Shown here: one piece after another, positions 1 through 58,112 of the stretch
Layout: the number at the start of each line of letters is the position of its first letter
Numbering within the stretch: the first letter of the stretch is position 1
DNA from: Lama guanicoe
Taxonomy: Eukaryota
Direction: 5' to 3'
Assembly (NCBI GenBank): GCA_013239625.1
Contig: MU056802.1
Span: forward strand, 1-64,000
Length of the DNA stretch: 64,000 nucleotides
Program-made: the position numbers and the translations under genes
The notes under the pieces: model-generated
Database searches by the model: none
Told to the model about the DNA's origin: nothing
What the model saw: only the letters and a program-made list of their open reading frames with translations

Positions 1-203
1 GGGGGGGGGGCGTCGGGACCGCCAGGCGCTTTGGGGAAGGTTGGATTCCCTTTGGCCATTCTTGGCTTCCTTTGGCGCCTCTTCTGAGGTCTCCCACGTC
101 CTTGTACAGGGAGTAACACGTGTGTGGACGTTGTCCTCGGGGCGCTCTGAACCTCCTGCAGGCCTCGTGGCGGACTTGAGATAAAACAGGTTCTCTTGTT
201 CAG

Positions 204-9102
<8,899 letters not shown>

Positions 9103-9775
9103 GGCGGGACGACTCCCGAGTGGGCGCTGCCCACGGGCCTACACTTCCCGTCATCAGGACCCTGACCCTGACCTTGGCTGTGCCACGTCCACCCAGCTGG
9201 CTGGACGTGCTCCAGGCCGGATTGATGGCAGCGGCCCCGTGGGCGACAGGGCCGGCATGTGTTGGGGCCCCGTAGGTGCTCGGGGCGGCCGCTGGGCCCG
9301 GCTCCTCGCCTGGTTCTCGTCAGGACACCGTCAGGAACAGACAGGAGCAAATGAGCGCTGTGATTCGGGGAGGCCCTGCCCACCCGGGAGCCTTCTTCCT
9401 TCTCCTGAGAAAATCGAATTCTGACTGCATTCCTGAGGCCCGACTGTCCTCCTGCTGGCCGTGCAAGGGCTTCGTGGGTGTCCTGGGGCCTCTGTCACCT
9501 GGGGCTACTCTGGCTCCCTGGAGCCCAGGGTGTGATCAGAGGCCGGAGCTGAGGGGACAGCCGGGTGCAGCTCAGCCTGGGGTCTCAGAGCCTGTGGACA
9601 CGCCCTGACCTGAGGGTCTGGGGGCATCTGTGACCTGGGGATATGGGCTCCTGGCTGGCTGTGGTGTTTACACGTTGGACTCAGGGATCCTCCCACTGCC
9701 CTGCTCGGGCTGGGAGGGGCTGGGCGGGCAAGTCACCTGCTCCCAGGCCAGCCCGACAGATGGACTTTCAGTCGG

Positions 9776-9781
9776 GATAAA
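9776..9781 (+). terminator. Probable variant poly(A) signal (GATAAA) of MAN1B1
   Basis: GATAAA about 670 nt after the stop, followed by a GT/T-rich downstream stretch; I noticed no AATAAA earlier in the UTR. Confidence 0.5.
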
Positions 9782-10556
9782 AGTACATTTGTTCCATCTG
9801 GTGTCTGCTGTCTTTAAACAAGTCTTGGCTCTCTGAAAGTGCACTGTGGAAGTGATGGGCAGTAGTTGGGTCAGGCGCACTTTGGTCCACAGGTCAGCTC
9901 TGCATCTGCCAGCAGTGGCGGGACTTTGGACGTGTCGGCTGTACAGGGCAGGTGATGGCCACTGTGGTGCCCAGAGCAAGGACATGGGCAAGATGCTTCA
10001 GGCCCCTGCTTGCGGCTTCCCTGCCAGGTGTGGGAGTCTCAGAGTTGTCATTCCTAGAGCCTCTGGCCCCTCAGGATCGTGTGCCCGGGGCGGCCCCAGT
10101 GTCACCAGGCCCAGGCCTGCCACTTGGCTTGGGGTGCCCTGGGGCTCCCAGCCTCCCCTCACTCACAGGCCCCACGCGCTATGTGCATGGAAAGTGTGTG
10201 GCTTGTCTCTCCAGTGGTCTCCAGTCCCGGCCCTTGTGGCTGCTGGCTGCTCGCTGCAGAGCCCCCCAAGCTGGGGGGGTGCCCTGTGGTCCCTGTCACC
10301 CCCTACCGCTGCCAGGCCAGGAGCCAGTCAGCACCTGTGTGGGACTCCCGACCGTGAGGGTTCCCAGTCCTACTGCAGGGTGCAGCCTGAGGCTGCTGAG
10401 AAGCCGACTGTCCAGCCCACACCCAGGCTTGGCCCCAGGCAGGCAACCTGGGAGGCAGCCAGGCTCCCCAGAGGGGCCCTGCCTTGTTAGCCGCCTGCCA
10501 CAGTAAAGGCCATGTCCCCATTGCCCAAGACAGCCAGCAGTGGAGCTGAGAACTGC

Positions 10557-10562
10557 TTTATT
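10557..10562 (-). terminator. DPP7 poly(A) signal AATAAA
   Basis: TTTATT on the + strand, about 230 nt past the DPP7 stop. Confidence 0.75.
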
Positions 10563-10791
10563 CAACAGTGAGTTTAGGAGGTCACGTGTTTGTGCTCAGT
10601 GCCCTGCTCTCCTGACCTGGCCATAGCCAGGACAGGACATGCTTGCCAGGCTGCCAGTGTTCAGCCTCTCCCTCGGGCAAGGGCCTGCCCACCCTGGGCT
10701 GAGCTCTGGGTTTAGGAAGGTGGGCCATGGCTTCTCTCCCCAGACTGCTGCTCTGGGCAAGGCTTCTCTGGTCCCACTGCGGGAGCGCCCC

Positions 10792-13700
10792 TCAGCCTCT
10801 AGGCCTTGTATGCTGTGCCAGTCGCCGCTCCTGCCTGGCTGCCTCCACCCACTTGCCAATGATGGTGGCCTCCAGCTGGCGCGCCTCCACCACAGATTCC
10901 GGGTCCTCTGGGTGGGATGTTCTGAGGAGCAGGTGTGGGGGGCACTCAGCTAGGCTGGCAGACCCCGACACTCATACTACCCTCGCCCATGACCAGCCAT
11001 CGGCCCAGGCCAGGAGCTGCGCCCCTCCCAAAGCAGGGCTGTACCTGAGGTCCAGGTGGTGTGCTCCCCCGTGGATGGTGATGGCGAGGACCGACGAGCT
11101 CAGGTTGCTCTGGATCTGTGTCAGTGAAGGAGACTCGTGTCAGGAGTGCGGTGTGCGCTCACCCTCAGCCCTCCCAGCACAACGTGATGGCTACACAGCC
11201 CAGCTTTCAGGGTGCACTGAGGTGGCTGCATAGCCTGGAAAGGTCCCGTTAGAAAGGAAAGGCTAAGGTTAATGAGCCAGATGCAAGGTCACCATCAGAG
11301 GTTAGGAAGAGAACGAAAACAGAGGGAGAGGAGGAAACGATGACGACTGGAACAGTACATGAAGGAGCTACAGAGCCCAGAGCGCTGGGACCCACACAGC
11401 AGGGGGGCCAGGGGCTGCCTGGCGTGACTCACCCCGCCCCCTGCCCAGGGGTCCAGGTCACCATTGGAGAAGATGATGTTGCTGGCAGCTGTAAGATCTG
11501 AAAGAGAGCACGTGGTGGTGGGGACCAGGTACAGCCCCCCAAATCCGTGATCCAGGGGCTGGGTCAGACCCCAGCTGTATCCCAGGAGTGGGAGGGGGCA
11601 GAGCCAGCTCAGTGCAGAGGGAAGGATGCCGCCCCAACCCCTGCCTCGAGCCTCACCGCCCCCCCCGAAGCTGGTCTGCAGCCAGTCCTGCCGGGGCCAC
11701 ACGCCCCACGTGTCCAGGCAGTACTGCTGGCGGAGGGCCTCGGTGAACGGCAGGTCGGGGAAGATGTCTGACACGTTGTTGCTGGAAAACGTCAAGCTGA
11801 TCTCAGTACAAGCCTGTGGGACACCCGCACCATGGTCAAGCCGATGGGGTGGTCCATCTTGTTAAGCACCCCCATACCCGGAAGTCGCAGGCCCCCAGCA
11901 CCCCCATACCTGGTAGTCCCAGGCCTTGGCATTGGGGCCCAAGCCACAGCCTGTGGGGTCCGCACAGGCCTGGTACTGCAGGTAGATGTCATAGCAGGGC
12001 GCCAGGCCTGAGGAATTGTACACCAGCCCTGGGGGAGAGGCGTGCTGGGGCCAGGTGCCTGGACACCCACCCTGCCCCCTTGGAGGGTTCCTGCAGGTGT
12101 CAGGAGCTCTGGGATCCCATGGGCCCAGTGAGGAGTGGGGTGTCTGGGGTCTGGGCTATCAGCTCCTGTCCTGGCTGCTGAGGGCAGCTGGGCAGCCCGC
12201 TCGATATTCCCCCACCCAGCAGGGCGTGCCACCCTTTGCACCTGGGGACTGCAGAGGGCCCTTGGAGCCCCGCTCCCAGGCTGGGCCAGGAAGGGAATGG
12301 CCACTTCCTCCCCAGGGGCCAAGTGGAGGCCTCTGTGTGCCCTGCCCCCATGCAGCCCTCGCTGGGCCTCACTCCTCAGCCCACCACCACCGTCGGGCCC
12401 CTCACACAGGGCAGCAGCCCGGGAAGGTGGGCAGACGCACCAGCCAGCTCACGGAGCCCCTTGATCCTCTGGCTTTTGCTCAGCAGCCGCTCACAGCCGA
12501 CCTGGAGTTGCCAGAAGAGTGCCTCAGCCGGTGACCCCTCCTTGAGACATGCAGCCCCCTCCCCAGCTCACCCTTCCCTGCTCCCAGGTGGCAGAGTAGG
12601 TGCAAGGCCCTCAAGCTGGCCAGCACTGACCACCCCTTCCCTGTCCATGGGACGCTGCCTTCCCCTGATTCCAGCCAGACGGGAGTGGGCGCCTTGCCTT
12701 GACGGGGTTGGCAGGAAGATGCCCCATGAAGTCGGTGGGGTATGGGTAGTCCATCATGGCCAGCAGGGTGAAGGCATTCCGGGCGAACCCAAAGAGCTGC
12801 AGTAGGTCCTTTGAGCCAGAGAGCAGCTGGCAGGTGCCAAACTCCTGGCTGACCGTGTCATAGTCTGGCAGGAGGGGTGGGACAAGGGCCTCTGGAGGCT
12901 GCGGGCTCTGGGTCAGGGGGTGGGGCAGGGAGGCAGGGGCCGGTGGGGGGCTGCCTCCTCACCTCCCTGTAGAAACAAGTCCTTGATCTGCTGGAAGGCA
13001 TCCCGCGCGGCCTGGGCACACTCAGGACTCTGGCCCTCAAAGTCCTAGAGGAGGAGAGGGCGTGGCTGCAGGCCCTGCTGCCTGGGCTGTCCAGGGGCCC
13101 CGAGCCCTCACTTACCGCAGAGACATCCCGGAAGAACTGGTAGGGGTCACCGAGGCCTGCCACTGCGACGACAGGTGCGCTTGCCGCCAGCGCCCCCGCC
13201 ACGAGGTGGGGGTACTTCATCCTCAGGTAGGCGCTGAGCATCCCCCCATAGCTGGGCGACAGTGCAAGGTTAGCTCTCCGGCCCCCAACCCGCACAGCAT
13301 CTGCCCACCTGCCCCAGGAGGGCGACCTTTCAGCCGGCATACGCCCCCTACATCCCCACTCTGCTCTCCCTTCTCAGAGCCACCACTCCCCAACTTCTTG
13401 CCCCTGAAGGCCCTGAAACCTCTAAGGCCCGTAGAAATTCTGGCCGAGAAAAAGCAAGCGTTTGTTCCAGGAGAGAAAGGAAAGGAGGACGCACCTCCCG
13501 CCAAAGGCGATGGCAGGGGCGTCCAGGGCCCCAAGCTTCCGCCGCAGCGCCCGGAGCAGCCCTGCGAAGTCGGCCAGGGCCTGCTCCACCGTCAGCAGCT
13601 CCGTGTACCCGCGCCACGTGGACCGCTCCCCGAACGGAAGCGACTTTCCGTAGTACCGCTGCGGGCAAGCGACCGGCAGACACTGGTCCAGCGCCCCCAC

Positions 13701-14245
13701 TGGCCCCGCGCCGCCCCCGCCCTGGCCCGCCGCGGCGGGTACCCACGTGCTCCGCAAAAACGACAAGGGCTGCCTGCTGCGCCGCCAGCTCCAAGATGAA
13801 CCCTGAGTTGTTGGCAAAGGACCACACGTCCCCCTCGTTGCCCGTGTAGAAGAATATGGGCCCCTCGCCCCTTTTCCAGAACTTCTCTGTCAGGTGGAGG
13901 CAAGGGGCCGGGTGAGGTGTGGGGCGCCCCGGGTCTCACCGGTCACCAGGAACGGTCCCCAGGGTGATCTCACCTGACACTAGGAACCGCTGGAGGAAGG
14001 TCTTGTTCCCAAACCTCTCGAAGTTGAAATGGTCCAGGAGCTGCTCGAAGTAGGCCTCCTGAAAGCCAGGGTCTGCGTCTCTGTGGACTGGAGGGCAGGA
14101 CGCTCAGCGGGCAGGGGACGCGCGGGTGGCAGGGGAGGCCCGCGGGTCGGCACTCACCCCTGGCCTCCAGGCTGCGCAGCTCCAGTGCCAGCAGCAGTGC
14201 CAGGGCCCAGAGCAGGGCCTGCCTGGGCGGGGGGCTCACGTCCAT
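10792..14245 (-). CDS. DPP7: Dipeptidyl peptidase 2 (S28 family), 13 exons, about 497 aa. Exons: 14158-14245, 13974-14087, 13747-13886, 13495-13658, 13116-13251, 12963-13044, 12698-12864, 12441-12501, 11910-12028, 11657-11813, 11433-11497, 11045-11115, 10792-10921
   Basis: Signal peptide ([11 protein letters not shown]), [31 protein letters not shown], catalytic [23 protein letters not shown]; exon lengths sum to 1494 nt (in frame). Confidence 0.96.
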
Positions 14246-15269
14246 TTTGCCCGTTTGCTTCGGGTCATGTGGGCAAGGTCAGGTGACGGCGGGGCACCCT
14301 CACGTGACGGCCTGGGCGGGGCTGTGAGCAGCGCCAGTCCTTCCTTCTCTTCCAGCTGCCCTGCTTCCAGGTCCTTAAGCCCAGGTCCTCAAGCTTCGGG
14401 CAGCCCTGTGTCACCATGGAGACTGTCTCCGTGGGGACACGTGAAGTGGGGTGAGGGCTCCAGCGGCCAAAGGGGAGGGGCGCTCCCAAGGGCAGGGCTG
14501 GGAAGGCTGCCTGCGGGGGTGGCTCTGACTGACCCTTGAGGATGGTCACGGGGTCCCTGAAAGAGGGTCAGCGGCCCTGAGAACGGAGCCCCAGCTGTTC
14601 CAGGGACAGTGAGGGCCGGTGTGGCTGCGGCAGGAGGCGGGTGGTCGGGAGCCCCCCAGGCAGGAGTTAGGGCGGCTCCTGGCGGGTGAGAGGGATCTGG
14701 GGTCCTCTCCCCTCCCCCTCGGGCTAGTCCCGTCCTGGCTCCTCAATGAGATGGGGTCCCAGGAGGTGCCAGTACCGAGAGGACAAAGGGGCAACCCTTG
14801 CCCCTGTGTGTAATCCAGGGCCTGGTGAGGGGCCAGCTGGGCCACAGAGGGCACCATGCCAGTCCTGCTGGGGATGTGGGCAGGGAGCCAGGCCCAAAGC
14901 AGGTGGGGGGAGGTGGCCCTGCCCTAGGCAGCAGAGGGGAGGGGAGCCACCCCTACCCACTCCCAGGACTGTCCTTGGGCAGCAGGACTCATGGCTTCTG
15001 CCCAGGCCTGGCCTGTCTGGTGCTGGGATGGCCCAGGCTGGGCTGGGGTCCTGGGCTCTGACTGCGCTGTGAAATCAGGAAACTGGGCCAGCCTGGGGGG
15101 TGAGTGGGGTGTGGTCCACGTGTGCAGCCCTTTGGCTTTCCCTCCCACTGTCCCAGGACTGTTGCTGTGGCAATCCGCAGGGTGACAGTGACTGTCCATT
15201 GTGTGACACCACCCTATGGCTGTGGTCACCCCGAGGTCACCCAGTGCCACACCACAATCACCCCACAGT

Positions 15270-15725
15270 CTCTGTGTCCCTGGCCCTGTGACCCTATCCC
15301 CATCCTTTGGTCCCTGTGTCCCCATGTCCCCATGTCCCTCTGTCCATGTCCCCATGTCCCTGTGTCCCCATCCCTGTGCCACCATCCCTGTTTCCCCATG
15401 TCTCCCCTGTTCCCATGTCTCTGTGTGCCAAATCCCATGTCCCCGACCCTGTGTCCCCATCCCATATCCCCGTCCTTGTGTCCCATCCCCCCATGGCCCC
15501 GTCCCTGTGGCCCCGTGTCTCCCATGGCCTCGTGTCCCCATCCCTGTGTGCCCACCCCTATGTCCCCGTCTGTATGTCTCCATGTCCCTATGTCCCCATC
15601 CCCATGTCCCCAGCCCTGTGCCCCTGTCCCTGTGTCCCTGTGCCCCCATGTCCCCACCCCTGTGTCCCCAGGTTCCCATGTTCCCGTGTCCCTATGTCCC
15701 TGTTCCTGTGTCCCTGTCCCCACAC
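15270..15725. repeat. Degenerate TGTCCCCA-type minisatellite upstream of DPP7
   Basis: Dozens of TGTCCC(C)A/TGTGTCCC units; they produce the spurious GH/PC-rich ORFs. Confidence 0.85.
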
Positions 15726-16299
15726 CTAGGGATGCCTGTTCTGTGTTGAGGAGAGAGCTGCCCTTGCAAGCCCCCCATGGCCTCTTTAGGTTGGGGGCCA
15801 GGACAAGACACAAGGACTCGCAGCCCCTCTCCTGGCTTCTCCCGCTCCCCTCCCCTCCTCTCAGCTCAGGGGCCTGAGCCGACCTCCCAACGCTGACCCA
15901 CCACACTCCCCTTCCAAACTCTCCAGGCAGCTCCTCCATGCCTGGGGTGGTACCGGGAAGGCCCATGGAGGTGCGTTCTGATTCCCTCCGACACTGTCCT
16001 GCCACACCTGGTGGCCCTGAGCATGCAGGTGTGTCTGAGGGTCCAGAAGCCCTTCCCCCAGCTGCCTGAGGTCGCTGACTTTGGGAATAAGGCTGGGGCC
16101 TGATTCCGCCTCCACAGCCCACAGATCTGGGGAGCCAGACCCTCGTCACAACCTATTCTGCCCCTTTCAGACCTCAAAGCTGGCAGGCTCAGAGGATGGG
16201 GGTGGGAGAGCGGGAGGACCCTACGTAGGTCCCAGGGCTCTCAGCTCTGGCCCATGTGGCACCTCCACTTGCGGCCACGTCACGGGTGTGTGTGAACTG

Positions 16300-19200
16300 A
16301 CACCCTTTTACCATGTTCATGTTCATTGGATTCAAGAACATCCGCACCATCGTTATTATCTAGTTCTAAAACGACTTCATCTTCCATCACAGAAGCTCTT
16401 CACTCATTGAGCTGCAATTCCCAATTCCCCTCCCCCAGCCCCTACTGTCCTCTCTGTCTCTATGAGTTTGCCTACTCTAGGTACCTCATATGAGTGGAAT
16501 CCCACAGAACTTGTCTGTGTCTGGCTGGTTTCACCGAGCCTAAGGTCTTCAGGGTCCGTTCGTGTCGTGGTGCATGTCAGGACGTCCTCCCTTTTTAAAG
16601 GCAGATAACACCCCGTTGCACGGGTGGACCACACCATGCATGTCCATTCCCCCATCAGTGGACACGTGGGGCGTTTCCCCCTTTTGGCTATTGTTAACAG
16701 TGCTGCTGTGAGCCTGGGTGTATGGACACCTCTTCAAGACCCTGCTTTCAATTTTTGGCAAGTATATACACAGAAGTGGGACTGCAGGACCATATGGTAA
16801 TTCTGTTTCCTTTTTGGAGAAACTGCCGAACTGTTTTTCCACAGTGGCTGCACCATTTTGCATTCCAGCCAGCAGTGCACAGAGGTTCCAGCGTCTCCAC
16901 AGCCTCATCGAGCCCTTGTTTCCCATTTAAGAGCAGCCATTGCCATGAGGGTGAGGCGGTCCCTCGTGATTTTGATCTGCATTTTCCTGATGATCAGCGA
17001 TATTGGGCAGCTTTTCATGTGCTTATGGAACATTTATCAGTCTTCTTTGGAAAAATATCTGCTCAGGCCCTAGCCAAGGGCTGTCCCCAGGCAGGTCCCG
17101 GTGCCCTCAGCTCCGACCCGCGTAGCACCTTGCAGTCGCATGTCCACGTTCATGTGTGTGGGTGCTACGTTACACATAATACATAAGGTTCCCTTGTGGC
17201 ACTGTGAAACGTGTTTTCATTCTTTGTTTATGCATTGCTGAGTTTTAGGAGGGTTTTTAGTTGCAGAATTTGGGTTTTTTTGTTTTCGATGTGTTTCAAA
17301 AGGTTTTGTTTGCTTTCGTTACTAAGTTTTAGAACTTTTAAAAAATATATTCTGGTATGTATGACCGAAACATCATGCTGTCCACCAGATATTGTCACAG
17401 CATTGTAAACTGCCTGTACATCAATAAAGAGGAATGCTCTACATATACACATATGTATATATTCTGATGGTTTAAACTCGCACAGGTACGTAGTTTGCAG
17501 GTATTTTCTCCCCTTCCAAGGGTTGCCTTTTCACGCTTGTTAGTGTCCTTGGGTGCACAAAAATTTTCATTCTGATGAAATCAACTTGTCTGTGTCTTCC
17601 ACTGCTTGTGCTTTGGCGTTTTATCTAAGAATCCATTGTCATTTCCAAGCTCATGAAGCTTAACCTGTATGCTATGTTTATAGGGCTTTCATGCTTTTAG
17701 CTCTAACGTTTAGGTCACTGATCCATTTTGAGTTAACTTTTTGTATGTGGTGCGAAGTAGGGGTCTAACTTCATCCTTTGCACGTGGAAATCCAGTTTTC
17801 CCAACATCATTTGTTGAAAACGAATTATTTCCTCCATGGAATAGACTTACTACCCTTGCGAAAACCAACTGGCCGCAGATATACGAGTTTATTTCTAGAC
17901 CCTTACTTGGGTCCTGTTTTGAATACTGTGCCTTTGTAGGATGTTTTAAAATTGGGAAATGTGTGTCTTCCAACCTTGTTCTTATTCAAGATTATTTTAG
18001 CGATTCAGTCCCCGCCCCTTGCAATGATTCCATGTGAAATTGGGGATTGACTTTTCAACTTCTGCAAAAAAAAAACTGCTGGAATTTTGACAGGGATTGC
18101 ACTGAACTTGCAGGTGACTTTGGGCAGTACTGACCTCCTAAAGTCAAGTCTTCCCACTCCTCATTTGTGTCTCCTTTCTTTCAGCAACACCTCCCTGGTT
18201 GAATTTATTTCTGGTCATTTTATTCTTTTAGATGCTATTTTAAATGGAATTGCTTTCTTGACTTCCTTTTGGATTGGTCATTGCAGGTGCATAGGAACAG
18301 GACTGATTCTGCTGGTTGATCCAGTACCTTGCCACTTTCCTGAATTTATTAGCCCTGGTAGCTTTCTTGTAGATTCTTTTGCACACAGCTTCTAGATATT
18401 TTTCCTCTGGGTTACCATGGAGATTACATTTAGCACTGTAAATTTATAATGATCTACTTCAATGGACAACTTCCGTCAGTAACATACATAAACTATGCTT
18501 CTAAACAGCTCCATCCTTTCCTCTTTGTGTTACTGCCATCGCATATTACGTGTTTGTACATTACATGCACAATGACATACATTTGTAATTATTTTTATGC
18601 ATTTGTCTTTGAAGTCCGGTGGTAAATAAAAAGTTGAGTCACAACCAAAAATACAATACTAATGCTTCCACTTACCCATGGATTTGCCTTTAACAGAGAT
18701 CTTAATGTCTCCCCATGTCTTCGAGGTGCTGTCTCAGGTCCTATTATTTCAGTCTGAAGGACTCCGTTCAGCATTTCTGGCTGGGCAGAGCTGGTGGCAA
18801 CAAACTCTCACTTTTTGTTTATCTGGGAATGCCTCAAATTCTGCCATATTTTTGAAGGTCATTTTGGCCAGATATAGAATTCTTTGCTGACAACTTTTCC
18901 CCCTATCAGTTTATGTATGTCGTTCCATTGTCTTCTGGCTTCTATCGTTTTTTGGTGAGAAATTATGTTATCTTACTGAAGACTGCTTGTACATAACAAG
19001 TAATTTCTCTTGTGCTATTTTCAAGATTCTGTCTGTCTTTCAACAATTTGATTATTTAAGCGTCTTGGTGTGGGTCTCTTTGAGTTGATCCTACTTGGAG
19101 ATCATTGAGCTTCTTGGATTTATAGGTTCATACCTTTCATTAAATTGGAGAAGTTTTAAAGAATATTTTTTCAAATGTTCTTTTTGCCCTCTTCTGTCTT

Positions 19201-19700
19201 CTCTGAGACTACTATAATGCACACGTGAGACCTGCTTAGGATAGGATCCCAGAGGTCCCCTGGTCTCTGTGCACTGTTCTCCACTCTTTCTTTCTGCTCT
19301 TCACATTAGTTTCAATAGTCCTGCCTCCACCTTTGCTCATTCTTTCTTCTGGCTGCTCAAATCTGCTACTGAGCCCCCTAATGAAGTTTTCATTTTAGTT
19401 ACTGTACTTTTCAGTATGAGACTTTGTTTCCTTTTAATAATTCCTCCTTATTGATACTCTCATTTTGTTCATATGTTATTTTTTATGACTGCCTTTACTT
19501 CCATGTGCATGTTTTCTTTGCACTCTTGTTAGCATTGTAAAGAAAGTTCTCTTAATGTCTTTTTGTAATAATTCTGATATCTGCAGTTCTTCAGGGATGG
19601 TGGCTATCAACATTTTGTTCCTTTGAGTGGACCGTACTTTCTTGTTTTTTAAATTTTCCCAGTGATTCTGTTGTTGCTGCTGTTGAAATATGGTTTTGAT
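16300..19700 (-). mobile_element. Cluster of old LINE-1 fragments, mainly antisense
   Basis: AT-rich; typical antisense L1 ORF2/3'UTR text (e.g. gaccatatggtaattctgttt...gaaactgccgaactgtttttccacagtggctgcaccattttgcattcc); decayed RT C-terminal-like peptide in ORF 16549..16926; boundaries approximate. Confidence 0.8.
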
Positions 19701-19869
19701 GGTTCTGATTTTTTTAATGTTTATGCGGGAATGAAAGCTTGGAGCTGCCTACTCTGCCTTGTGGATGACAACCTACCCTCTTCTTTGGCTTTGCTGGTCT
19801 TTCCATTATACCTAAGTTCCGTATTGCATTAACTTTTATTCCATCATTAGCTACACCCCTTTCCTGTCT

Positions 19870-20035
19870 GGTTTTGTGGTAAGCTGGATAAGATGCCACT
19901 ACCTATTCCAAAACTAAATATGCAACCTGACATGACAAAAGGAAAGCTGTGGGTGGAATTAACTTAAGGACTGAAGATAGCAAGATTGTCCTGGATGGAA
20001 ATATGACTATCAGAGGACTAGAGTTGGAGATGTGA
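19870..20035 (+). mobile_element. Degenerate MLT1-like (ERVL-MaLR) LTR remnant next to the duplication breakpoint
   Basis: aatatgcaacctgacatgacaaaagga...aattaacttaagga...gattgtcctggat resembles the MLT1 5' consensus as I recall it. Confidence 0.45.
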
Positions 20036-20126
20036 CAGCAAAACAACTTCAGTCTCTCAATCTATACCCAGACATTTCACAATGACGGAGATCTGCTTAC
20101 CAACATGGGAAATATCACAGTTAGAG

Positions 20127-21578
20127 CAAATGTACTTTTATCCCGACTGAAAGTCCATCTGTCGGGCTGGCCTGGGAGCAGGTGACTTGCCCGCCCAGCC
20201 CCTCCCAGCCCGAGCAGGGCAGTGGGAGGATCCCTGAGTCCAACGTGTAAACACCACAGCCAGCCAGGAGCCCATATCCCCAGGTCACAGATGCCCCCAG
20301 ACCCTCAGGTCAGGGCGTGTCCACAGGCTCTGAGACCCCAGGCTGAGCTGCACCCGGCTGTCCCCTCAGCTCCGGCCTCTGATCACACCCTGGGCTCCAG
20401 GGAGCCAGAGTAGCCCCAGGTGACAGAGGCCCCAGGACACCCACGAAGCCCTTGCACGGCCAGCAGGAGGACAGTCGGGCCTCAGGAATGCAGTCAGAAT
20501 TCGATTTTCTCAGGAGAAGGAAGAAGGCTCCCGGGTGGGCAGGGCCTCCCCGAATCACAGCGCTCATTTGCTCCTGTCTGTTCCTGACGGTGTCCTGACG
20601 AGAACCAGGCGAGGAGCCGGGCCCAGCGGCCGCCCCGAGCACCTACGGGGCCCCAACACATGCCGGCCCTGTCGCCCACGGGGCCGCTGCCATCAATCCG
20701 GCCTGGAGCACGTCCAGCCAGCTGGGTGGACGTGGCACAGCCAAGGTCAGGGTCAGGGTCCTGATGACGGGAAGTGTAGGCCCGTGGGCAGCGCCCACTC
20801 GGGAGTCGTCCCGCCCTAGGCGGGGGCCCAGATGGGCAGGGGGTGAGCCTCAGTGTTGAACACGTAGGTGTCCAGGCTGAGCAGGTTTGGGTCGTCAGAG
20901 AAGAGCAGGTACAGGTACTTGAGCGTCTCCCCCAGAAAGAAGCTCTCCATCTTGTCCCTGGGCTGGGGATTGCTGGGGTCCTGCACGTTGCTGATGGAGG
21001 AGTAGCCGCCCGAGGGGACCTGCACGAGAGCCCAGGCCTCAGCGTCAGGACTGCGGGCTCGGCCCTCTCGAGGACGGCCAGCCAGAGGCACCCTCTGAAG
21101 GCCCCTTCCCACCGCAGCACACACAGTCCCCCAGGGCAGGGACTAGAATGGGGAGATCACCGGGGCCCACAGGGGGACCTGCCGCCCTGGCAGTCAGCCA
21201 GCATTCCTCTGGATGCCCCTGGGGGATGCCAGCAGCCCTCAAGTGACCAGATGGAAAGGGCCTTGGAGGTCTTGCAAAGGCCCTGAGGTCACGTGATGGG
21301 AGTAAACTACACGGCCTCACATGCCACAGGGTAAGGGTCAAGTGACCTCTGAGCCGTGGCCCCGCCTGTGAGACGGGTGGCCGAGCCTGAGCACAGTGCG
21401 GGTGGCGCCATGGTCATGGCAGCCGTCCTGGGGAGCAACAGCCCAGAGGTCACCCCAGGTGCAAACGTGCTGTCCAGGCCACTCAGAGGACCCAGGAGGG
21501 ACACGCAACGTGCACCTCAGGCCACTGCAGGGACCCTCGCCACACATGCTGGCCCCCTGCCCCTGGGTCATTTGCACC
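20127..21578 (-). repeat. Inverted duplicate arm A = reverse complement of 8340-9791 (MAN1B1 intron 12, exon 13, 3'UTR)
   Basis: Paired coordinates sum to 29918 (ORF 8794..9102+ mirrors 20816..21124-); sequence is nearly identical. Confidence 0.97.
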
Positions 21579-24500
21579 TAGAGACACATTATCTTCACGT
21601 AACCCAATCTCTGTGGCATAATAGCTGTGTCGGGCAAGACTTGGGGCGCCAGTGGCTGCGTCGGGTCACGGGTCACCCCCTGAACCACGAGGCCCCTCTG
21701 ATGCAACAGAAACATCCAGGGCCCACATTCGGCCCTCCGGGGGCCAGAAGGGACACCTGTCCTGAGCCAGCCCTGGACGCCCAGACGTAAGGGGACAAAG
21801 GAATTGCCCATGGCCAGCACGTCCATCCTAGCACCCAGGAAGGGGGGATGTGTGGTCCAGAAGGGAAGAGCGCCACTTAGATCTCCTGGGCAAGGCTGGC
21901 CCACGGCCCGAGGGTCACCCACGGGGACCTGGCTGCACAGTAGGAAGGAGAGATACCTTTCTTCAGACCCAAGATCCACATGGTGTCCAGGGCGTCGATC
22001 AGCGTGAGGCCGAGGCCGAACCACTCACTGAAGGACCTGGACACGGGCCTCAGCTCGTCATGGCCCCAGGCGAACTTGCGGTACCCGGCCCACGCATGGC
22101 GGAAGGCGTCGATCACGGCCTTCTGGCGCTCCTTGGGGGAGGCTGGGGGGTAAGCCAGCTGTGAGGACCAGTCAGCACTGAGACCAGCTGCTCTGTGGTC
22201 CCACAGCGAGCGATGCAGATGGGGGGACACTGTCCAGGCCACAGGAAGCAGGGGACCGCAGAGAAGGCCAGGACGCTCAGTGCCGGACCTGGCCGCCAAG
22301 CCCGGCTGTCCACCTGCACCAGGGGCCTGGCAGGTGTGACCCTCCGGGGCGCCGGGACACTCAAGGAGCAAAGGTAACCGAGGCCCCAGAAGCAAGGCAG
22401 CTGCGCTGCGCAAAGTGGCTGTGGGGACGTCCAACGTGACAGGGGCCGGTGACCCGGACGAGAACACCTGACGAGCATCCCTCCCGGGGCTGCAGGGCTG
22501 GACACGGGACGACAGACCGTCCAGGACCCACGTGTCCTCACTAGCGCTCTAGTGCGTGCCTGGCCCCCGACGCCGGGCCCCCGGGGTGTCCCAGGCTGCG
22601 CAGCGCCCGGAGGCACAGCAGGAGCTGCACCGCCCGCCCCGCGGCGCCTCTGCGTGTCCACACCCCATCTCTGTCCAGATGCCCAGGTGAGGCCCGGGAG
22701 GGCGCAGGCGGGACCTTACCTGCCGGGTTCTGAATCCCGAGGGCCTGTGGGGAAGGCCTAGGGGGGCCCTCTGCCTTCCTAGAAGGGAGCTCGCTGCCCT
22801 GCTCCGGCTCCATCACTGCTCCCCTCCAGCTAGGAGGAGAGAAGGAAAAGCATTCAGAGCAGCTCAGGGGGGCAAATGCCCCGCGGTCGCTGCCCAACTC
22901 AGGCTCGGATGTGCCCTCCACGCGGCAGGACCACGAGGAGGCGGGGCCCTGCCTCACCAGGCGCAGACTGTCTGCCTCAAAGGAGAACACACGGCAAACA
23001 TCATGGGAGTTCTCCTTGTTTTTCGGAAAAGAAAACAGCAAAGAGACCAGCCTCCTGGTTGCTCACGTTCAGACCCGTCTGCCCGCGTACCTGATGGTTC
23101 TCTGCCCCTTTTCGTCCACCGCGTCTGCCCTCCTCTCGGCCTCATCCTGCCCCCTGTCCTTGGAAGCTCTGTCGGGGGCTCTGATCTGCAGGTTGGGTGG
23201 TCCCCGTCGGAAATGCCTTGGAGGCTTCTGGACAAAACAAGAGTCACTCCTGAAAGGGCGCACCTGCCGACGAGCTGCTGTCCTTTTCCGCCCGGGGCGC
23301 TCTCCGTGGCCAGACCCCGCCACGCGGAGTGCCGTGGGCCGGCTGTGCGGCTGTGCTGTCCCAGGGGAAGGTCTTTTCACTTCTCCTGCGATGTGCAGAT
23401 TTGCGGGGAGCTCTGGGTACCCGGACGGAGGCTTTGCCGACGGGCGAGGACAGCCCGGGTCAGCGGGCCAGCCCCGGCCAGGACGTTTACAGACGTCAGA
23501 CCCTAAGGGTGGCCAAGAAGGGGTAGAACCACCGTGTCCCCATGGGCGGAGCTGCAGAGAATGCTGTCGCTGGCCTGCGTCTAGGGCTCCCCAGCTTGGT
23601 CCTCAGAGCACTGTGGCGGGGTGGCCGGGCAGCGACAAAGCGCCGTGCGGGGAGCAGCCCCGCTCCTGGCACAGCCAGTCCCCACCAGCGGGTGTGCTCG
23701 GCCACCGCTCCGGGGAGGGAGGGTTGCCTGCTTGTGAGCGGAAAACCCTTGCTTTTCAGGATCTGTGGCAGCCTCGGGAGAGGGTCTGTGAAGACATCTT
23801 CCTTGCAAAGATTCAAACCCCAGGAGCTGGGGCCCCTGGGCCAAGAGAAGGGGGCCTGGCCGAGACGAGGCACTGCAGCCAAAGTAGGCCTGGACGAGTG
23901 CTGGGGTCCAGGCGACAGAAGGTCTAAGAAGGTGGCCTCCAGAAGCCCAGCGTGCCCGAGGGGACTTGGGCCAGGGAAGAGGCACACACTCACCCCGTCA
24001 CGTCCACGCCCCTCCTGGACACCAGCGCCCGGCTCGTGGACGTCGAGGTGTGGACGTGTGTCTTTCAGTTGGGGAAACGCGCCACCTTGTGCTTTCACAC
24101 GACCGTGAAGGTCAGCGTGCAAGAGCGCGGCCGCAGGAGGGACAGAATGCGTTTGGGCTCTTGAGGGGAGAAATCTGGCCTTTTCCACAGGCCCTCACGC
24201 CAGACACGGGAGAGCGGCCTCCTGTCTCTCCCCAGGGCAGCCCTGCAGGGTGTGAGCCAGCACCTGGCCCGGATCCCCTCCTGGCGGCCCCGGCACCCAG
24301 CCAGCGGGGGAGGCTCCCCAGGTGCACAGCTCCCAGTTCTCCAAGGCCAGCCCACGAGCCACCTGCCTTTGGAGGGGTCCTTCCCTGGCTCTCTCGCTGC
24401 CAATGACGCCCTCTAATCTCCACACCCTGCACTGCACGCGTGGGGCTGCCGCAGAGCTAGGCCTGCCCCTTTCCTCCAGCCTTTGTGGACGCCACGCACC

Positions 24501-25175
24501 CCTGCACCTGAGCACTCCCAAACCTGTATCCCAGGATGCAACTCTGACCCTCGGGGCCCCCACACCTCCGTCTGGGCACAGCCCGGGCCAGGACCTCCCA
24601 GAGAGAAGGGATGGGTTTTGTTCACACCCTGCCGGGGTCCGGCCCTGCAGGTGTGCAAGTAAGACGAGCAAAGAACATTCCTCCTCCTCTCCCTGCTACC
24701 ACTTGCCCGACCAGCCCTGAGCAAGGAGGGTGAGGTTAAAGCCTCCAACAGACGGGAGAAAAAGAGTTCTCCCCAGTCTGCCTGAAACAGCACGTACTGC
24801 TCTGAAGTGCTTCTGGAACGGACCCGCTTACAAGTCCACACACAGTGTATTCAAAGTACCTGCGGTGAGAGCCCCGGGAAGGTTTCTGGGTGAGCGTCTG
24901 CTTTCTGAGGGGCTGGCAGGACCGGTGGGTTTGCTGGTCTCATCCTCTGCCCTTCCGCTGACCTGTTCTCGGCTGAACAAGAGAACCTGTTTTATCTCAA
25001 GTCCGCCACGAGGCCTGCAGGAGGTTCAGAGCGCCCCGAGGACAACGTCCACACACGTGTTACTCCCTGTACAAGGACGTGGGAGACCTCAGAAGAGGCG
25101 CCAAAGGAAGCCAAGAATGGCCAAAGGGAATCCAACCTTCCCCAAAGCGCCTGGCGGTCCCGACGCCCCCCCCCC
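21578..25175 (-). repeat. Inverted duplicate arm B = reverse complement of 1-3598 (MAN1B1 intron 2 to intron 6); probably continues beyond 25175 with its partner outside the window
   Basis: Paired coordinates sum to 25176 (ORF 335..763+ mirrors 24413..24841-; 1249..2265- mirrors 22911..23927+). Confidence 0.97.
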
Positions 25176-27019
25176 CACAGCACACAACACTCCCCTCGCA
25201 GTTTTGGTTTCAGCACGTATGGACGGTGGCAAGCGGGCAGTCTGCTCGAGCACCCACTGGGCCTTTAGTTTTCCTCCTCCAGAGCCAGTTCAGAGGAGCT
25301 CGGGAGGGGTCCTCCGCGTGTGTGCCGGCACCCGGCCCGCTCCGTCCCCAGCGCCCGGCAGCACGCGTGAGGATGTTCCCGGAACGTGTCTGGACTGAGC
25401 CTCCACCCTCAGGACCTGAATCTCACTGTGAGACGGAGGAGCAGGTGCCAGCGCTTAACCAGACGCCCGGGAAACAGCCAGCCGGCCTCAGAGTGACACC
25501 CACGTTGCAGCCAGGTGCTGGGGACGCTCTCGGCCTGTCTCTCCATTTCCATTTCCTGCCAGTCTGTGAGGTCCCCCTCCTGCAGCTGCGAGGTCGCTGC
25601 GCTACTGCCTAGTCACCCCCAGCCCCCTCAGCTGTCCCGTCAGGAGGGTGCCGCGGGTACCTGGCCACTGGTCAGACGTGCTGACGTAGGTCAGGAGGCC
25701 ACAGAGCATCAGAAAGGCCAGCAGGAAGAGAATGGCGTTCCGCTGAAACCTGGACAGCTGCTTCCATTTCTGAGGGCGGGCAGAGAACGACACTCTTTAC
25801 TGACAGTAACACAACGGGAAACCTCAACTGTGGCAAACTCCTTGAGGACGAGGAGGAATTCAGAAGGTCCAGTGAGGGGCCCTGTTGCTTTTGAAATGCG
25901 GGAAGCTCCGTCTCAGCGGGGACCACACTGCAGCTGACACACGGCACTGGTGGCGCGATGCGAACGAACACACACGTCGGAAGCGCTTCCGCCCCACGCG
26001 TGGGCAGTGGAGAGAGACGGGCAACTCTCGTGTCCCGGCTGAGGCCGGGGGGGCCTTGCCTCTGCTGAGATGTGCGGGGCCGCCGCCCCGCAGCCCGGGA
26101 CCCGGGACAGCAGGACCGGTGGCCCCCACCTCCTCGCCCCTGAAAATGTGCAAGTTCTTTGTGTCTCATTAAAGACTTTGTGGAACGGAAATTGAGTACT
26201 AACTGACTATGGTTTTGGCCGCTGGATATTCTTGACCCATTAGGTCTTATAATAGGACCACTGTGCCCTCAGCAAACACAATTTATTGAGGTGAGGTCAA
26301 GTACAATTTGCACAACTTAAATTTGGGATCAGTGATATAATGGAAACTTACGAACCAGAAGGGGCCTGTTGGGCGCCCAGGAAAAGGGGATGGGTGTTGT
26401 GCTTCTCCTTAATTACTATGAGACCATGGAGTCTGAAATCACAGAATGAAGGTAAGGGAGATTTGTTTGTGTTGTTTGTCACCTCTCAGTAGCCAGACCA
26501 AAATCTCCTGATTCTAGACAGAAGTAAAAGAAAATCACCTCTCAGGATGTAAATCCAGGTCAGAGAAAGAAGTCTGTATAAAGCTTAAAACGGTGACTGG
26601 GGCAAAGTTTGTCCAGAGGAAACAAGATTGAGAAGAAACCTTCTGAATGTCTTAGCTCTAGAGGCCAGCATGAGGACGGACTGATAGACAATGTTGAAGA
26701 CATTAGAAAGCCGAGAGGCAGACAAACCATCAGGAAGCAGATGTTAGAGACCAGAATAAAACTGCACCAAGTTGAAACAGAAATGTAATCAGATTACTAA
26801 AACACCACTAAGGGGCTTACTCCTAGGAACACACACACAGCAATGCTGCGGTGTGAATGGAACACCAGATGTCCGCTCAGCGTGGACTGACTTCCCGGCC
26901 AAGGGCAGGGACCACCTCGGGCACGCAGAGGCACGAGGCCTTCAGACAGGTCCGTCTGAGGGTTCCGTCCAAGGCCACGAACCTCCCTCTGTGAAGCCTT
27001 TCTGTGAGGAACACGCCCC

Positions 27020-27255
27020 ACAGGAGGGACTGGACCCGGGCAGGAGGACGGACTGGACCCTGGCAGGAGGGGGGACTGGACTCCCGCAGAAGAGGGGACT
27101 GGACCCCCGCAGGAGGGGGGACTGGACCCCGGCAGGAGGAGGGGCTGGACCCCCGCGGGAGGAGGGGCTGGACCCCGGCGGGAGGAGGGGCTGGACCCCC
27201 GCGGGAGGGGGGCTGGACCCCCGCGGGAGGCGGGCTGGACCCCCGCGGGGGGGGT
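27020..27255. repeat. G-rich ~22-bp VNTR (GGAGGGGCTGGACCCCCGCGG-like) in intron 1 of the MAN1B1 copy
   Basis: About 10 imperfect copies of (GA)GGGGCTGGACCCC visible. Confidence 0.85.
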
Positions 27256-27279
27256 AAGCCTCTGATTGGGGCCCCTTGC

Positions 27280-28040
27280 GGGCGGCAGGCGGCCGCGTCG
27301 TCCGTGCTCAGGCGACAGTGTGACAGCGCCGGCCTCAGCCGTCTCATCGCGTCCCAGACGACCTCGTCCGAGGCTGGGTCCCAGGCGTCTCGGTCCGGCT
27401 GTCGCCGCCGCGGCCGAGCCCTGGACGCCAGGGGCTCCTCCGTCCTCCCCGAGGCACCGGCGCAGGCTCGGCCCGGCCGGGGACCGCGACGGCCTCCCGC
27501 CCGCGCCGCGCGGCCCCGCAGTCCCGGCCGGCGGCCCTCACCGAGCGGCGCCGCCAGCCGCTGCCGCGCTCAGAGCTGCGGCCGGGGCTCAGCCTCAGCG
27601 CGAAGCAGTCCCCACGCGGCGCGGGGGGCGGATACATGGCCCGGACGGCCCTCGGGGGTCCGGAGGCCGGCTCGGAGCGGGCGCGGAGCTCGCCGGCCTA
27701 AAGCCGCTGCTGGCGGCTAGCGCCGCGCCCTCCACGACCGGCCTCCGCGAGCGCAGCGCGCACGCGCAGGGATGGGACCTGGGGCGCCGTTCTGCGCCTG
27801 CGCAGGCCTCCTCCGAGCTGGGCGCTGGCCATGGCAACAGAAGCGCGCGGCGGCCATGGCAACAGAAGCGCTCGGCTTCCGCGCGGGCAGGTCTCCCGCC
27901 GCTCCGCCAGGCTGGCAGGGAGCTCCCGCGCCCCGGACCCGGGGCCCCACCCGCCCCAACACCAGGCAGATTTGAGGAGGGTTCCCGGCCATCAGTCCTT
28001 TCGCTGAGGCCGCCCGCTGAGTTGGACAGACGCGCTCTGG
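27280..28040 (-). promoter_or_regulatory. CpG-island promoter of the MAN1B1 copy
   Basis: Dense CpG; NRF1-like TGCGCCTGCGCA at 27793-27804; two copies of GGCCATGGCAACAGAAGCGC (27827-27846, 27852-27871) containing an RFX X-box-like GTTGCCATGG. Confidence 0.75.
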
Positions 28041-35489: not shown

Positions 35490-56880
<21,391 letters not shown>

Positions 56881-58112
56881 GACGCCCTGCCCGCCCTCCT
56901 CTGCCCCCCTCCCCCGCAGACAGACAGACAGACGGACGGGACAGCGGCCCGGCCCACGCAGAGTCCCGGAGCACGACGGGGTCAGGGGAGGAGCGCCCCC
57001 CCAGCCTCCCCCAGGCTGCGCCCGCCTGCCTGCTGGTCGGCCGGCTGGCCGGTCCACCCGTCCCGGCCCCGCGCGTGCCCCCGAGNNNNNNNNNNNNNNN
57101 NNNNNNNNNNNNNNNNNNNNNNNNNNNNNNNNNNNNNNNNNNNNNNNNNNNNNNNNNNNNNNNNNNNNNNNNNNNNNNNNNNNNNNNNNNNNNNNNNNNN
57201 NNNNNNNNNNNNNNNNNNNNNNNNNNNNNNNNNNNNNNNNNNNNNNNNNNNNNNNNNNNNNNNNNAAGGCCCGAGGGAAGCCCACCCGCCAGAGACTGCC
57301 CACCCTGGGCCTCCCGTCCCTACATCTGCCCTGCTGCTGGCCGGCAGCCCCTACTGGACTGAGGCACGGACCAGAGCGGCTGAGGACGGGCCAGAGCTGA
57401 GCGGGCTGGGCAGGGCCACAGGGCGCTCCGGCAGAGGCAGGGCCCTGGGGTCTCTGAGCAGTGGGGAGAGGGGCTGACTTGGCCCCAGGCGGAGGGGCTT
57501 GGAGCAGAGACTGAAGCCCCATCCTTCCCCCAGCCACCACCAGAGCCACAGTGGGGGCCCTTGGCCACCCCCTCCCACAGCGCCCGCACCTCACCGCCTC
57601 GCTCCACCTCTCCTCTTCTTGCTCACGCCCCTCCTCCGCCTGACCCCATCCTCCGAGCTTGCCCTGCCTTTCCCCTTCTGCAGACCCTGACCCTCCCCCC
57701 CAGCTGGCAGCCGCCTCCCAGGGGGTGCTCCAGCTCCCCATTGCCTCCCACCTTCTCTGGACTCTGCAAGGGCTGAGCCTTCTCTTTGCTTCCTCTGGCC
57801 TGCAGCCCAGGATGGGCTTCCCCAGACGCTGGCGCAGGACTGTCCTCAGCCCTGCGCCCCACCTTGTACAGGCCCAGCCCCTCCCGTGTCCCGGCGCGTG
57901 CCTTCCCCCAGCAGCCTGTGTGCAGCCGCGGGCCACCCCTCTGCCCCAGGGGCCGGGCGCGCACCGCCCACCCCCGCCCCGACCCGGTGTGTGCAGTGGT
58001 GATGCCTAAAGGAATGTCACGAAAATTTCGATCTCTGTCGCTTGTTGATGCCTGCAGGGAGTGTGGAGGAGGACACGGGGTAGGGAAGGATTCGAGGGCA
58101 GCCGCGGCCTTC

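What the first reader, a model, noticed from the sequence alone, without database searches (positions are those of the whole stretch)
20127..27900. Extra inverted MAN1B1 copy with intact promoter and exons 1-6 plus 13, missing the catalytic exons 7-12
Seen: 21578-25175 is the reverse complement of 1-3598, and 20127-21578 is the reverse complement of 8340-9791. The two are fused at 21578 with 1-bp microhomology, so about 4.74 kb (exons 7-12) is gone. Exon 2, exon 1 and a CpG-island promoter continue to about 27900. Established: the human order is MAN1B1-DPP7-GRIN1 with no second MAN1B1, so this looks lineage-specific. The result is an inverted repeat with DPP7 in the spacer.
Basis: partly seen in the sequence, partly recalled or inferred. 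Interest (0 to 1): 0.85.

Follow-up and report, generated by a model that had tools for sequence, protein, structure and literature searches.

The report
Camelid truncated inverted MAN1B1 duplicate
The window really holds a second, inverted, catalytically dead copy of the ER mannosidase gene MAN1B1 next to DPP7; alpaca and camels share it, so it is old, and ongoing gene conversion keeps it almost identical to the working gene. It is an instructive but not unprecedented case.

Summary
Window 21578-25175 is the reverse complement of 1-3598, and 20127-21578 is the reverse complement of 8340-9791. The two pieces are fused at 21578, and 4,741 bp carrying GH47 exons 7-12 is missing.

The copy is not an assembly artefact. 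RefSeq annotates a separate 290/291-aa "MAN1B1-like" gene in Vicugna pacos (XP_072816664.1) and in Camelus dromedarius, C. ferus and one further Camelus record. All these models carry the same diverged exon 1 and the same out-of-frame exon 6 to exon 13 join. Every window exon matches the alpaca model.

The copy is old, not recent. Exon 1 groups by paralogue across the two genera. Exons 2-6 group by species: the paralogues show 0 differences within alpaca and 0 within C. ferus, but 5 fixed differences between the genera. That pattern is concerted evolution by gene conversion.

In the window, 11 of the 13 arm mismatches lie within 83 and 29 nt of the deletion junction. They are mostly CpG transitions. 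The rest of the arms is 99.96% identical.

The product lacks all three catalytic residues, and its function is unproven. The scan's earlier notes cover this same stretch only, not other DNA.

The parts
1..3598 (+). Arm A of the functional MAN1B1 (copy 1): part of intron 2 to 378 nt into intron 6. Holds exons 3 (204-316), 4 (1949-2085), 5 (2347-2456) and 6 (3034-3219). The left end is the window edge, not the arm end.
3599..8339 (+). Copy-1-only segment of 4,741 nt with exons 7-12 (about 3918-4067, 4415-4609, 6539-6733, 7166-7288, 7811-8008, 8089-8226). It encodes GH47 profile positions 52-397 and the motifs that hold the catalytic residues E330, D463 and E599.
   Evidence: residues from PMC12904022
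8340..9791 (+). Arm B of copy 1: the last 559 nt of intron 12, exon 13 (8899-9099, stop at 9100-9102) and the 3'UTR. The only poly(A)-like hexamer, GATAAA, lies at 9776, 10 nt before the arm ends.
9792..20126 (.). Spacer of 10,335 nt. It holds DPP7 on the minus strand (about 10540-14245; AATAAA at 10562), a degenerate GC-rich minisatellite (about 15270-15720) and an AT-rich, repeat-like stretch (16500-20126).
20127..21578 (-). Arm B' of the duplicate: 3'UTR, exon 13 (21019-20898, read in the +1 frame, stop at 20897-20895) and the rest of the fused intron. It has 4 mismatches to arm B, 3 of them within 29 nt of the junction.
21550..21660 (-). Deletion junction at 21578 (1-nt microhomology) with its flanking unconverted zone: 11 mismatches in 112 nt (90.2% identity), 9 of them transitions and 6 in CpG context.
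21578..25175 (-). Arm A' of the duplicate, with exons 6 (22142-21957), 5 (22829-22720), 4 (23224 or 23227-23091) and 3 (24972-24860). All splice sites are GT-AG.
25176..27637 (-). The 5' part of the duplicate. Its counterpart in copy 1 lies outside the window. It holds exon 2 (25769-25661), intron 1 and the diverged exon 1 (ATG at 27637 to 27542, donor GTGAGG).
27000..28000 (-). CpG-island promoter region of the duplicate: GC 0.74-0.84, CpG o/e 0.8-1.1 over 27200-27999.
35622..35888 (+). GRIN1 exon 1 (context only). It matches GluN1 residues 1-89.

Best explanation
This is a real, camelid-specific paralogue of MAN1B1, named 'MAN1B1-like' by RefSeq. It arose as an inverted partial duplication placed between DPP7 and GRIN1 before the Camelus and Vicugna lineages split. 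A 4.74-kb non-homologous deletion with 1-nt microhomology removed exons 7-12. The copy has its own CpG-island promoter and a diverged exon 1. Splicing exon 6 to exon 13 shifts the reading frame, so the ORF is 290 codons. The product is a type II membrane protein with a cytosolic tail, a TM helix, the stem, the first ~53 GH47 positions and a 41-aa novel tail. It lacks the segment that carries all three catalytic residues. The two arms (at least 3.6 kb plus 1.45 kb) are kept about 99.96% identical to the working gene by recurrent arm-to-arm gene conversion. Conversion stops about 30-85 nt short of the deletion junction, where the old ~10% divergence survives, and it does not reach exon 1. Shown here: the structure, its presence in several species, and the concerted-evolution pattern. 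Inferred: the conversion mechanism, promoter activity (from CpG-island retention), and the idea that the product is at most a non-catalytic by-product or modulator.
For: Structure. Exon content: Pfam GH47 positions. Splice sites and phases: exon lengths 96+109+113+134+110+186+122 = 870 nt = 290 codons, all GT-AG. Independent annotation: XP_072816664.1 (Vicugna pacos, 291 aa), XP_064346865-7 (C. dromedarius), XP_032334872-4 and XP_074218828-30 (C. ferus and another Camelus record), plus an older 242-aa record; all show the exon 6-13 frameshift tail. The window's exon 1 is 32/32 identical to the alpaca model, and the other exons match. Concerted evolution, exons 2-6 (218 aa): 0 differences between paralogues in alpaca, 0 in C. 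ferus, 2 in dromedary, and 5 fixed differences between genera in all four cross-pairings. Exon 1 instead groups by paralogue. Mismatch clustering: 11 of 13 mismatches lie in 112 of 5,050 nt (binomial p = 5e-17), mostly CpG transitions, which points to real old substitutions rather than sequencing error. The CpG island is retained. 14 DNA runs from 4 organisms in 4 studies hold 96-98% of the sampled words of 18200-23800.
Against: No read-level test of junctions 20127 and 21578 was possible in this genome. No genomic DNA from Camelus could be fetched, so concerted evolution across genera rests on 5 amino-acid sites plus the window's own DNA identity. The alpaca RefSeq model may come from the same assembly as the window and would then not be independent; the Camelus models are independent. 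The arm stays identical right up to the outer boundary at 9791/20127, with no diverged edge like the one at the deletion junction; a simple edge-effect model does not predict this. Transcription and translation of the copy were not observed directly.
Confidence: 0.85

Rival explanations
1. Assembly artefact: a misplaced or inverted haplotig carrying a heterozygous 4.7-kb deletion allele, or a chimeric fold-back join. Under this reading only one MAN1B1 exists.
For: The arms are 99.96% identical, which is allele-like. The junctions could not be checked with reads. Searches for the junction ORF and the junction DNA pattern were blank, although those collections hardly contain camelid DNA.
Against: Copy-2 exon 1 is only ~50% identical in amino acids to the canonical exon 1, so the copy is not an allele. 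The same diverged exon 1 and the same exon 6-13 join are annotated as a separate gene in chromosome-scale assemblies of alpaca and of C. dromedarius, C. ferus and a further Camelus record, beside a full-length MAN1B1 on the same chromosome. The junction-proximal mismatches are CpG-type substitutions, not random errors.
Confidence: 0.03
2. A very young duplication private to this species or genus. The arms are identical simply because there has been no time to diverge, and no gene conversion is needed.
For: There are only 2 mismatches in 4,938 nt away from the junction, and the identity runs right up to the outer boundary at 20127.
Against: The same paralogue, with the same diverged exon 1 and the same deletion product, is present in Camelus and Vicugna. 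There is ~10% divergence next to the junction and ~50% amino-acid divergence in exon 1. The five genus-diagnostic residues are shared by both paralogues within each genus.
Confidence: 0.04
3. The 290/291-aa product is a selected, non-catalytic regulator, such as a decoy or dominant negative that competes for partners of the MAN1B1 tail, TM or stem. It would tune glycoprotein quality control in camelids.
For: The ORF, the ATG, the exon 1 splice donor and the CpG island are intact in both genera. Exon 1 differs at 1 of 32 residues between genera. MAN1B1 has reported catalysis-independent roles that involve its cytoplasmic tail (Iannotti 2014 and Sun 2020, cited in PMC12386520; the originals were not held).
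Against: Most of the ORF is kept intact passively, by conversion from the selected parent gene. The one copy-specific coding part (32 codons) is too short for a test; with roughly 3-4 changes expected under neutrality and 1 seen, p is about 0.07-0.2 by my estimate. The cytosolic tail is heavily altered. A GH47 fragment of ~53 positions plus a frameshift tail is unlikely to fold. No expression data could be examined.
Confidence: 0.15
4. The duplicated promoter mainly acts as an upstream alternative promoter for DPP7, which lies on the same strand about 6 kb downstream of the copy's 3' end. It would give read-through or fusion transcripts.
For: Copy 2 and DPP7 are both on the minus strand, with copy 2 upstream. 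The only poly(A)-like hexamer of the copy is a weak GATAAA.
Against: No fusion model was seen among the RefSeq proteins retrieved, although long fusions were partly outside the length ranges searched. I did not test this.
Confidence: 0.07

Closest known systems
RefSeq 'endoplasmic reticulum mannosyl-oligosaccharide 1,2-alpha-mannosidase-like' genes of Vicugna pacos (XP_072816664.1) and Camelus (XP_064346865-7, XP_032334872-4, XP_074218828-30)
   Same: This is the same gene. The alpaca model matches the window's exon 1 at 32/32 residues and has the same exon 6-13 frameshift tail. It is 290/291 aa long and sits on the same chromosome as full-length MAN1B1.
   Different: These are automatic models only. 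No paper was found on them. The inverted-arm structure, the deletion junction and the concerted evolution are not part of the annotation.
Sex-chromosome palindromes with arm-to-arm gene conversion (human Y P6, PMC3723533; primate X palindromes, PMC8981503)
   Same: Inverted arms are more than 99.9% identical around a unique spacer. Identity is maintained across species splits by intrachromosomal gene conversion, so the arms group by species.
   Different: This locus flanks autosomal-type genes (MAN1B1-DPP7-GRIN1). The arms are short (at least 5 kb seen, against 8 kb or more to Mb). One arm is interrupted by a 4.7-kb deletion, so conversion runs in two separate blocks. One arm carries a broken gene rather than two intact copies.
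Truncated lineage-specific gene duplicates such as human SRGAP2C, ARHGAP11B and NOTCH2NL (from my own knowledge, not tested here)
   Same: A partial segmental duplicate encodes an N-terminal fragment of the parent protein with a novel C-terminal tail. In principle it could modulate the parent.
   Different: No functional evidence exists for the camelid copy. Those human cases are dispersed duplicates, not inverted neighbours undergoing conversion with the parent.
Other 'MAN1B1-like' partial models (Kogia breviceps P0019, Tenrec ecaudatus P0041)
   Same: They are truncated GH47 models named MAN1B1-like, which hints that this subtelomeric-type GC-rich locus is prone to rearrangement.
   Different: Their structures differ: Kogia retains exon 7 and reads into an intron, and Tenrec keeps several catalytic exons. 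Neither has the camelid exon 1 or the exon 6-13 tail. I did not examine whether they are real copies.

Membership tests
Functional GH47 class I alpha-1,2-mannosidase (Pfam PF01532) | A complete GH47 domain (profile positions 1-455) in one reading frame | tested here: not met
   Copy 2 keeps only profile positions 1-53 (exon 6). Positions 52-397 are deleted, and exon 13 (positions 397-455) is read out of frame.
Functional GH47 class I alpha-1,2-mannosidase (Pfam PF01532) | Catalytic residues equivalent to human E330, D463 and E599 | tested here: not met
   The motifs [14 protein letters not shown] and RPETVES lie in exons 7, 9 and 12 (3774-8250), which are absent from copy 2. Residue numbers are from PMC12904022.
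Paralogue of MAN1B1 by DNA-level segmental duplication | Introns and flanking non-coding DNA are co-duplicated, and the exon order is collinear | tested here: met
   The arms cover part of intron 2, introns 3-5, part of intron 6, part of intron 12 and the 3'UTR.
Processed retrocopy | No introns, and a poly(A) tract at the 3' end | tested here: not met
   Introns are retained, and there is no A-tract after 20127. The arm does, however, end about 10 nt after the only poly(A)-like hexamer.
Palindrome / inverted repeat under arm-to-arm gene conversion | Inverted arms more than 99% identical around a unique spacer | tested here: met
   Identity is 99.96% outside the junction zone, and the spacer is 10,335 nt.
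Palindrome / inverted repeat under arm-to-arm gene conversion | The structure is older than a speciation event, yet the arms group by species (concerted evolution) | tested here: met
   This was tested at protein level only. Five genus-diagnostic residues are shared by both paralogues, while exon 1 groups by paralogue. It could not be tested on Camelus genomic DNA.
Palindrome / inverted repeat under arm-to-arm gene conversion | Arm length of 8 kb or more, as in 'large palindrome' surveys | tested here: inconclusive
   5.05 kb of arm is visible, but arm A is cut by the window edge at position 1.
False duplication / haplotig artefact | No paralogue-specific sequence and no support from other assemblies | tested here: not met
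   Exon 1 is diverged, and separate gene models exist in alpaca and in the Camelus records retrieved.

The most novel reading that the evidence does not exclude
The 290/291-aa tail-TM-stem fragment has been kept for more than 15 million years as a camelid-specific, catalysis-independent modulator of MAN1B1-dependent ER/Golgi glycoprotein quality control. The inverted arms would also drive recurrent inversion of the DPP7-containing spacer.
Probability: 0.12. Interest if true: 0.7.

Novelty: new member of a known kind. Interest (0 to 1): 0.4.

Why it matters
It turns a suspected misassembly into a clean natural example of concerted evolution outside the sex chromosomes. A broken inverted paralogue stays 99.96% identical to its essential parent gene across a genus-level split. 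The unconverted junction flanks and exon 1 preserve the true age of the duplication.

For annotators, it explains why camelid genomes carry a 'MAN1B1-like' gene. It also warns that short reads will mis-map here: calls in MAN1B1 exons 3-6 and 13 are confounded by the copy. The inverted arms predict a possible inversion polymorphism around DPP7. Conversion from the dead copy could also export mutations into MAN1B1, a gene whose loss causes a congenital disorder of glycosylation in humans.

Whether the truncated protein does anything is open and can be tested.

Tried and rejected

3. A protein search with the 145-aa ORF spanning junction 21578 was blank. An exact scan of metagenome contigs for the junction 26-mer was blank. 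Neither result is informative, because those collections hardly contain camelid non-coding DNA.

4. A deletion by recombination between dispersed repeats is rejected: 3300-3900 and 8050-8650 share no homology.

5. A retrocopy origin is rejected, because introns are kept and there is no A-tail.

6. A diverged continuation of the duplication beyond 9791/20127 was not found.

7. A GT-AG or GC-AG 'cryptic intron' explanation for the deletion gets no clear support from the junction letters.

8. The share-of-words figures from the look-up of sequencing runs cannot resolve the junctions. About 6 of the 581 sampled words span them.

9. Iannotti 2014 and Sun 2020 were not held and are cited second-hand.

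10. P0026, a Logan protein, looks human or primate. It was displayed once, reappeared in a hit list, and was not used, compared or searched further.

11. I did not build or search a joined spliced sequence from window letters. Exons were compared one by one, and only their lengths and phases were summed.
Full report
**Observation**

The repeat finder reports two inverted pairs: 1-3601 with 21575-25175, and 8340-9800 with 20118-21578. They are the only long inverted repeats in the whole window. The tool rounds their identity to 100%.

Counting bases gives the true arms as 1-3598 and 8340-9791, 5,050 nt together, with 13 mismatches. Both arms share base 21578, a single G of microhomology. The segment missing from the second copy is 3599-8339, 4,741 nt.

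There is no similarity between the two deletion ends, so the deletion was not repeat-mediated. There is also no residual similarity beyond 9791/20127. Position 1 is only the window edge, so arm A probably runs further left.

**Gene content**

Stop-free pieces on the plus strand match Pfam Glyco_hydro_47 in order:
- Profile positions 1-53 lie at about 3070-3225, in exon 6, inside arm A.
- Positions 52-108, 106-169, 170-233, 278-335 and 347-397 lie inside 3774-8250, the deleted part.
- Positions 397-455 lie at about 8905-9099, in exon 13, inside arm B.

Minus-strand pieces at 12861-13935 match Peptidase_S28, which is DPP7. A plus-strand piece at 35622-35888 matches residues 1-89 of GluN1.

The human catalytic residues E330, D463 and E599 (PMC12904022) sit in motifs encoded only in the deleted exons.

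**Anatomy of the copy**

The exons on the minus strand are:

| Exon | Coordinates |
|---|---|
| E1 | 27637-27542 |
| E2 | 25769-25661 |
| E3 | 24972-24860 |
| E4 | 23224 (or 23227, a NAGNAG acceptor)-23091 |
| E5 | 22829-22720 |
| E6 | 22142-21957 |
| E13 | 21019-20898, stop at 20897-20895 |

All splice sites are GT-AG. The coding lengths sum to 870 nt, or 290 codons. Exon 6 ends in phase 1 while exon 13 normally starts in phase 0, so exon 13 is read out of frame for 41 codons. I did not build a joined sequence from window letters; I summed only lengths and phases and compared exons one at a time.

Exon 1 sits in a CpG island with GC 0.74-0.84 and CpG o/e 0.8-1.1 over 27200-27999.

**Real or artefact**

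A search with the junction-spanning ORF and a metagenome scan for the junction 26-mer were both blank, which says nothing.

The decisive evidence came from a protein search with exon 6 and from cluster look-ups. RefSeq annotates a full-length MAN1B1 of 650 aa and, on the same chromosome, a separate 'MAN1B1-like' gene of 290/291 aa:

| Species | MAN1B1 | MAN1B1-like |
|---|---|---|
| Vicugna pacos | XP_072816659 | XP_072816664 |
| Camelus dromedarius | XP_064346860 | XP_064346865-7 |
| C. ferus plus a further Camelus record | XP_032334864 / XP_074218821 | XP_032334872-4 / XP_074218828-30 |

An older 242-aa record (UPI00057B935E) carries the same exon 6-13 tail.

All the 'like' models start with the variant exon 1 (MYPPPAPRGDCFALR[L/V]SPGRSSERGSGWRRRS). 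After ...ILGLKK they continue into the frameshifted exon 13 tail.

tblastn of the alpaca proteins on the window gives 32/32 identity for exon 1. The other exons are identical apart from splice-edge residues. The window is therefore alpaca or a very close relative. The Camelus assemblies are independent of it, so a haplotig or fold-back artefact is effectively excluded.

**Age and concerted evolution**

Exon 1 groups by paralogue. The canonical form (MYPPPPPPAPQRDFISVTL...) is shared by the MAN1B1 of alpaca and camels. The variant form is shared by the 'like' genes of both genera. The two forms are only about 50% identical. The duplication and the divergence of exon 1 therefore predate the Camelus/Vicugna split.

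Over exons 2-6 (218 aa) the pattern is the opposite:
- The paralogues differ at 0 sites in alpaca, 0 in C. ferus and 2 in dromedary. Each dromedary difference is a private change in one copy.
- All four cross-genus pairings differ at the same five sites (P/L, A/T, S/F, D/E, A/P).
- The first codon of exon 13 behaves the same way. It is V against I in the parent gene and G against D in the shifted frame, and both paralogues within a genus share the same base state.

This is the signature of gene conversion between the arms.

The window's own DNA shows the footprint:
- 11 of the 13 mismatches lie within 83 nt (arm A side) and 29 nt (arm B side) of the deletion junction, giving 90.2% identity there. 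The binomial p for this clustering is 5e-17.
- 9 of those 11 are transitions and 6 are in CpG context, so they look like old substitutions rather than errors.
- The remaining 4,938 nt carry 2 mismatches (99.96% identity).

Conversion tracts evidently cannot approach the 4.7-kb heterology. By my rough estimate, about 10% divergence corresponds to roughly 25-45 million years at 1.2-2.2e-9 substitutions per site per year. This fits an origin in the camelid stem lineage.

One point stays unexplained. Identity runs right up to the outer boundary at 9791/20127, with no diverged edge. That boundary also lies only 10 nt after the sole poly(A)-like hexamer of the 3'UTR.

**Mechanism and function**

The most likely reading is a transcribed, catalytically dead paralogue. 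Most of its sequence is held intact passively by conversion from the selected parent gene.

Retention of a full CpG island after such a time suggests that the promoter is unmethylated and active in the germ line. This is an inference.

The predicted product keeps an altered cytosolic tail, the TM helix, the stem and a fragment of the first GH47 helices. Catalysis-independent roles of the MAN1B1 tail are reported (Iannotti 2014 and Sun 2020, cited in PMC12386520; the originals were not held). A modulatory role is therefore conceivable but unproven. The only copy-specific coding stretch, 32 codons with 1 difference between genera, is too short to show selection.

Because copy 2 lies upstream of DPP7 on the same strand, read-through into DPP7 is possible but was not tested. 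The inverted arms also predict possible inversion of the spacer.

**Comparison and novelty**

The gene is already present as automatic RefSeq models. A full-text search for MAN1B1 with 'camel' found nothing relevant.

The inverted-arm structure behaves like the sex-chromosome palindromes that keep more than 99.9% arm identity by gene conversion (PMC3723533, PMC8981503). Here, however, the arms are short, one is interrupted, and the structure pairs a working gene with a broken one at a locus of autosomal-type genes.

I rate it a new member of a known kind. The finding is solid and instructive, and it is useful for annotation and variant calling, but it is not a surprise to specialists.

- N runs were left untouched.
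- P0026 looks human or primate and was not used further.

Noticed in passing
window 9776-9791 and 20127-20142: The duplicated segment ends about 10 nt after the only poly(A)-like hexamer (GATAAA) of the MAN1B1 3'UTR, essentially at the transcript's 3' end. Yet the copy keeps its introns and has no A-tail. This may be coincidence or a clue to how the duplication formed.
   Followed up: partly
window 15270-15720: A degenerate GC-rich minisatellite (units of 8/14/22 nt, TGTCCCCA-like, about 30-50 copies) lies upstream of DPP7 and translates as long GHRDMGTWG-like pseudo-ORFs.
   Followed up: partly
window 50540-51175: Two direct copies of a 300-nt unit, 99% identical and 336 nt apart, lie inside the GRIN1 gene region.
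   Followed up: no
window 38118-38273, 42936-43163, 48490-48685, 54532-54744, 56643-56862, 57086-57265: There are six N runs of 156-228 nt within the GRIN1 region. Their sizes would fit masked conserved exons or small gaps.
   Followed up: no
proteins P0212 vs P0213 (Camelus dromedarius): In dromedary the two paralogues differ at two residues of exon 4 (R/K and V/A). Each is private to one copy. These look like recent mutations not yet erased by conversion and could serve as paralogous sequence variants.
   Followed up: partly
proteins P0001 and P0216 (KAB1280051.1, KAB1280052.1, C. dromedarius GenBank annotation): Two adjacent MAKER models both carry the canonical exon 1 but stop by reading into intron 6. 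This suggests that the older dromedary assembly switches between the near-identical arms or is broken there.
   Followed up: no
proteins P0019 (Kogia breviceps) and P0041 (Tenrec ecaudatus): Other mammals also have truncated 'MAN1B1-like' RefSeq models with different structures. These may be independent partial duplications at this locus, or annotation artefacts.
   Followed up: no
window 27593 region versus Camelus models P0092/P0219: Camelus isoform X3 uses an alternative exon 1 donor created by the V codon (AGG|GTGAGC). The window has CTG (L) at that position, so this isoform should not exist in the window species.
   Followed up: partly
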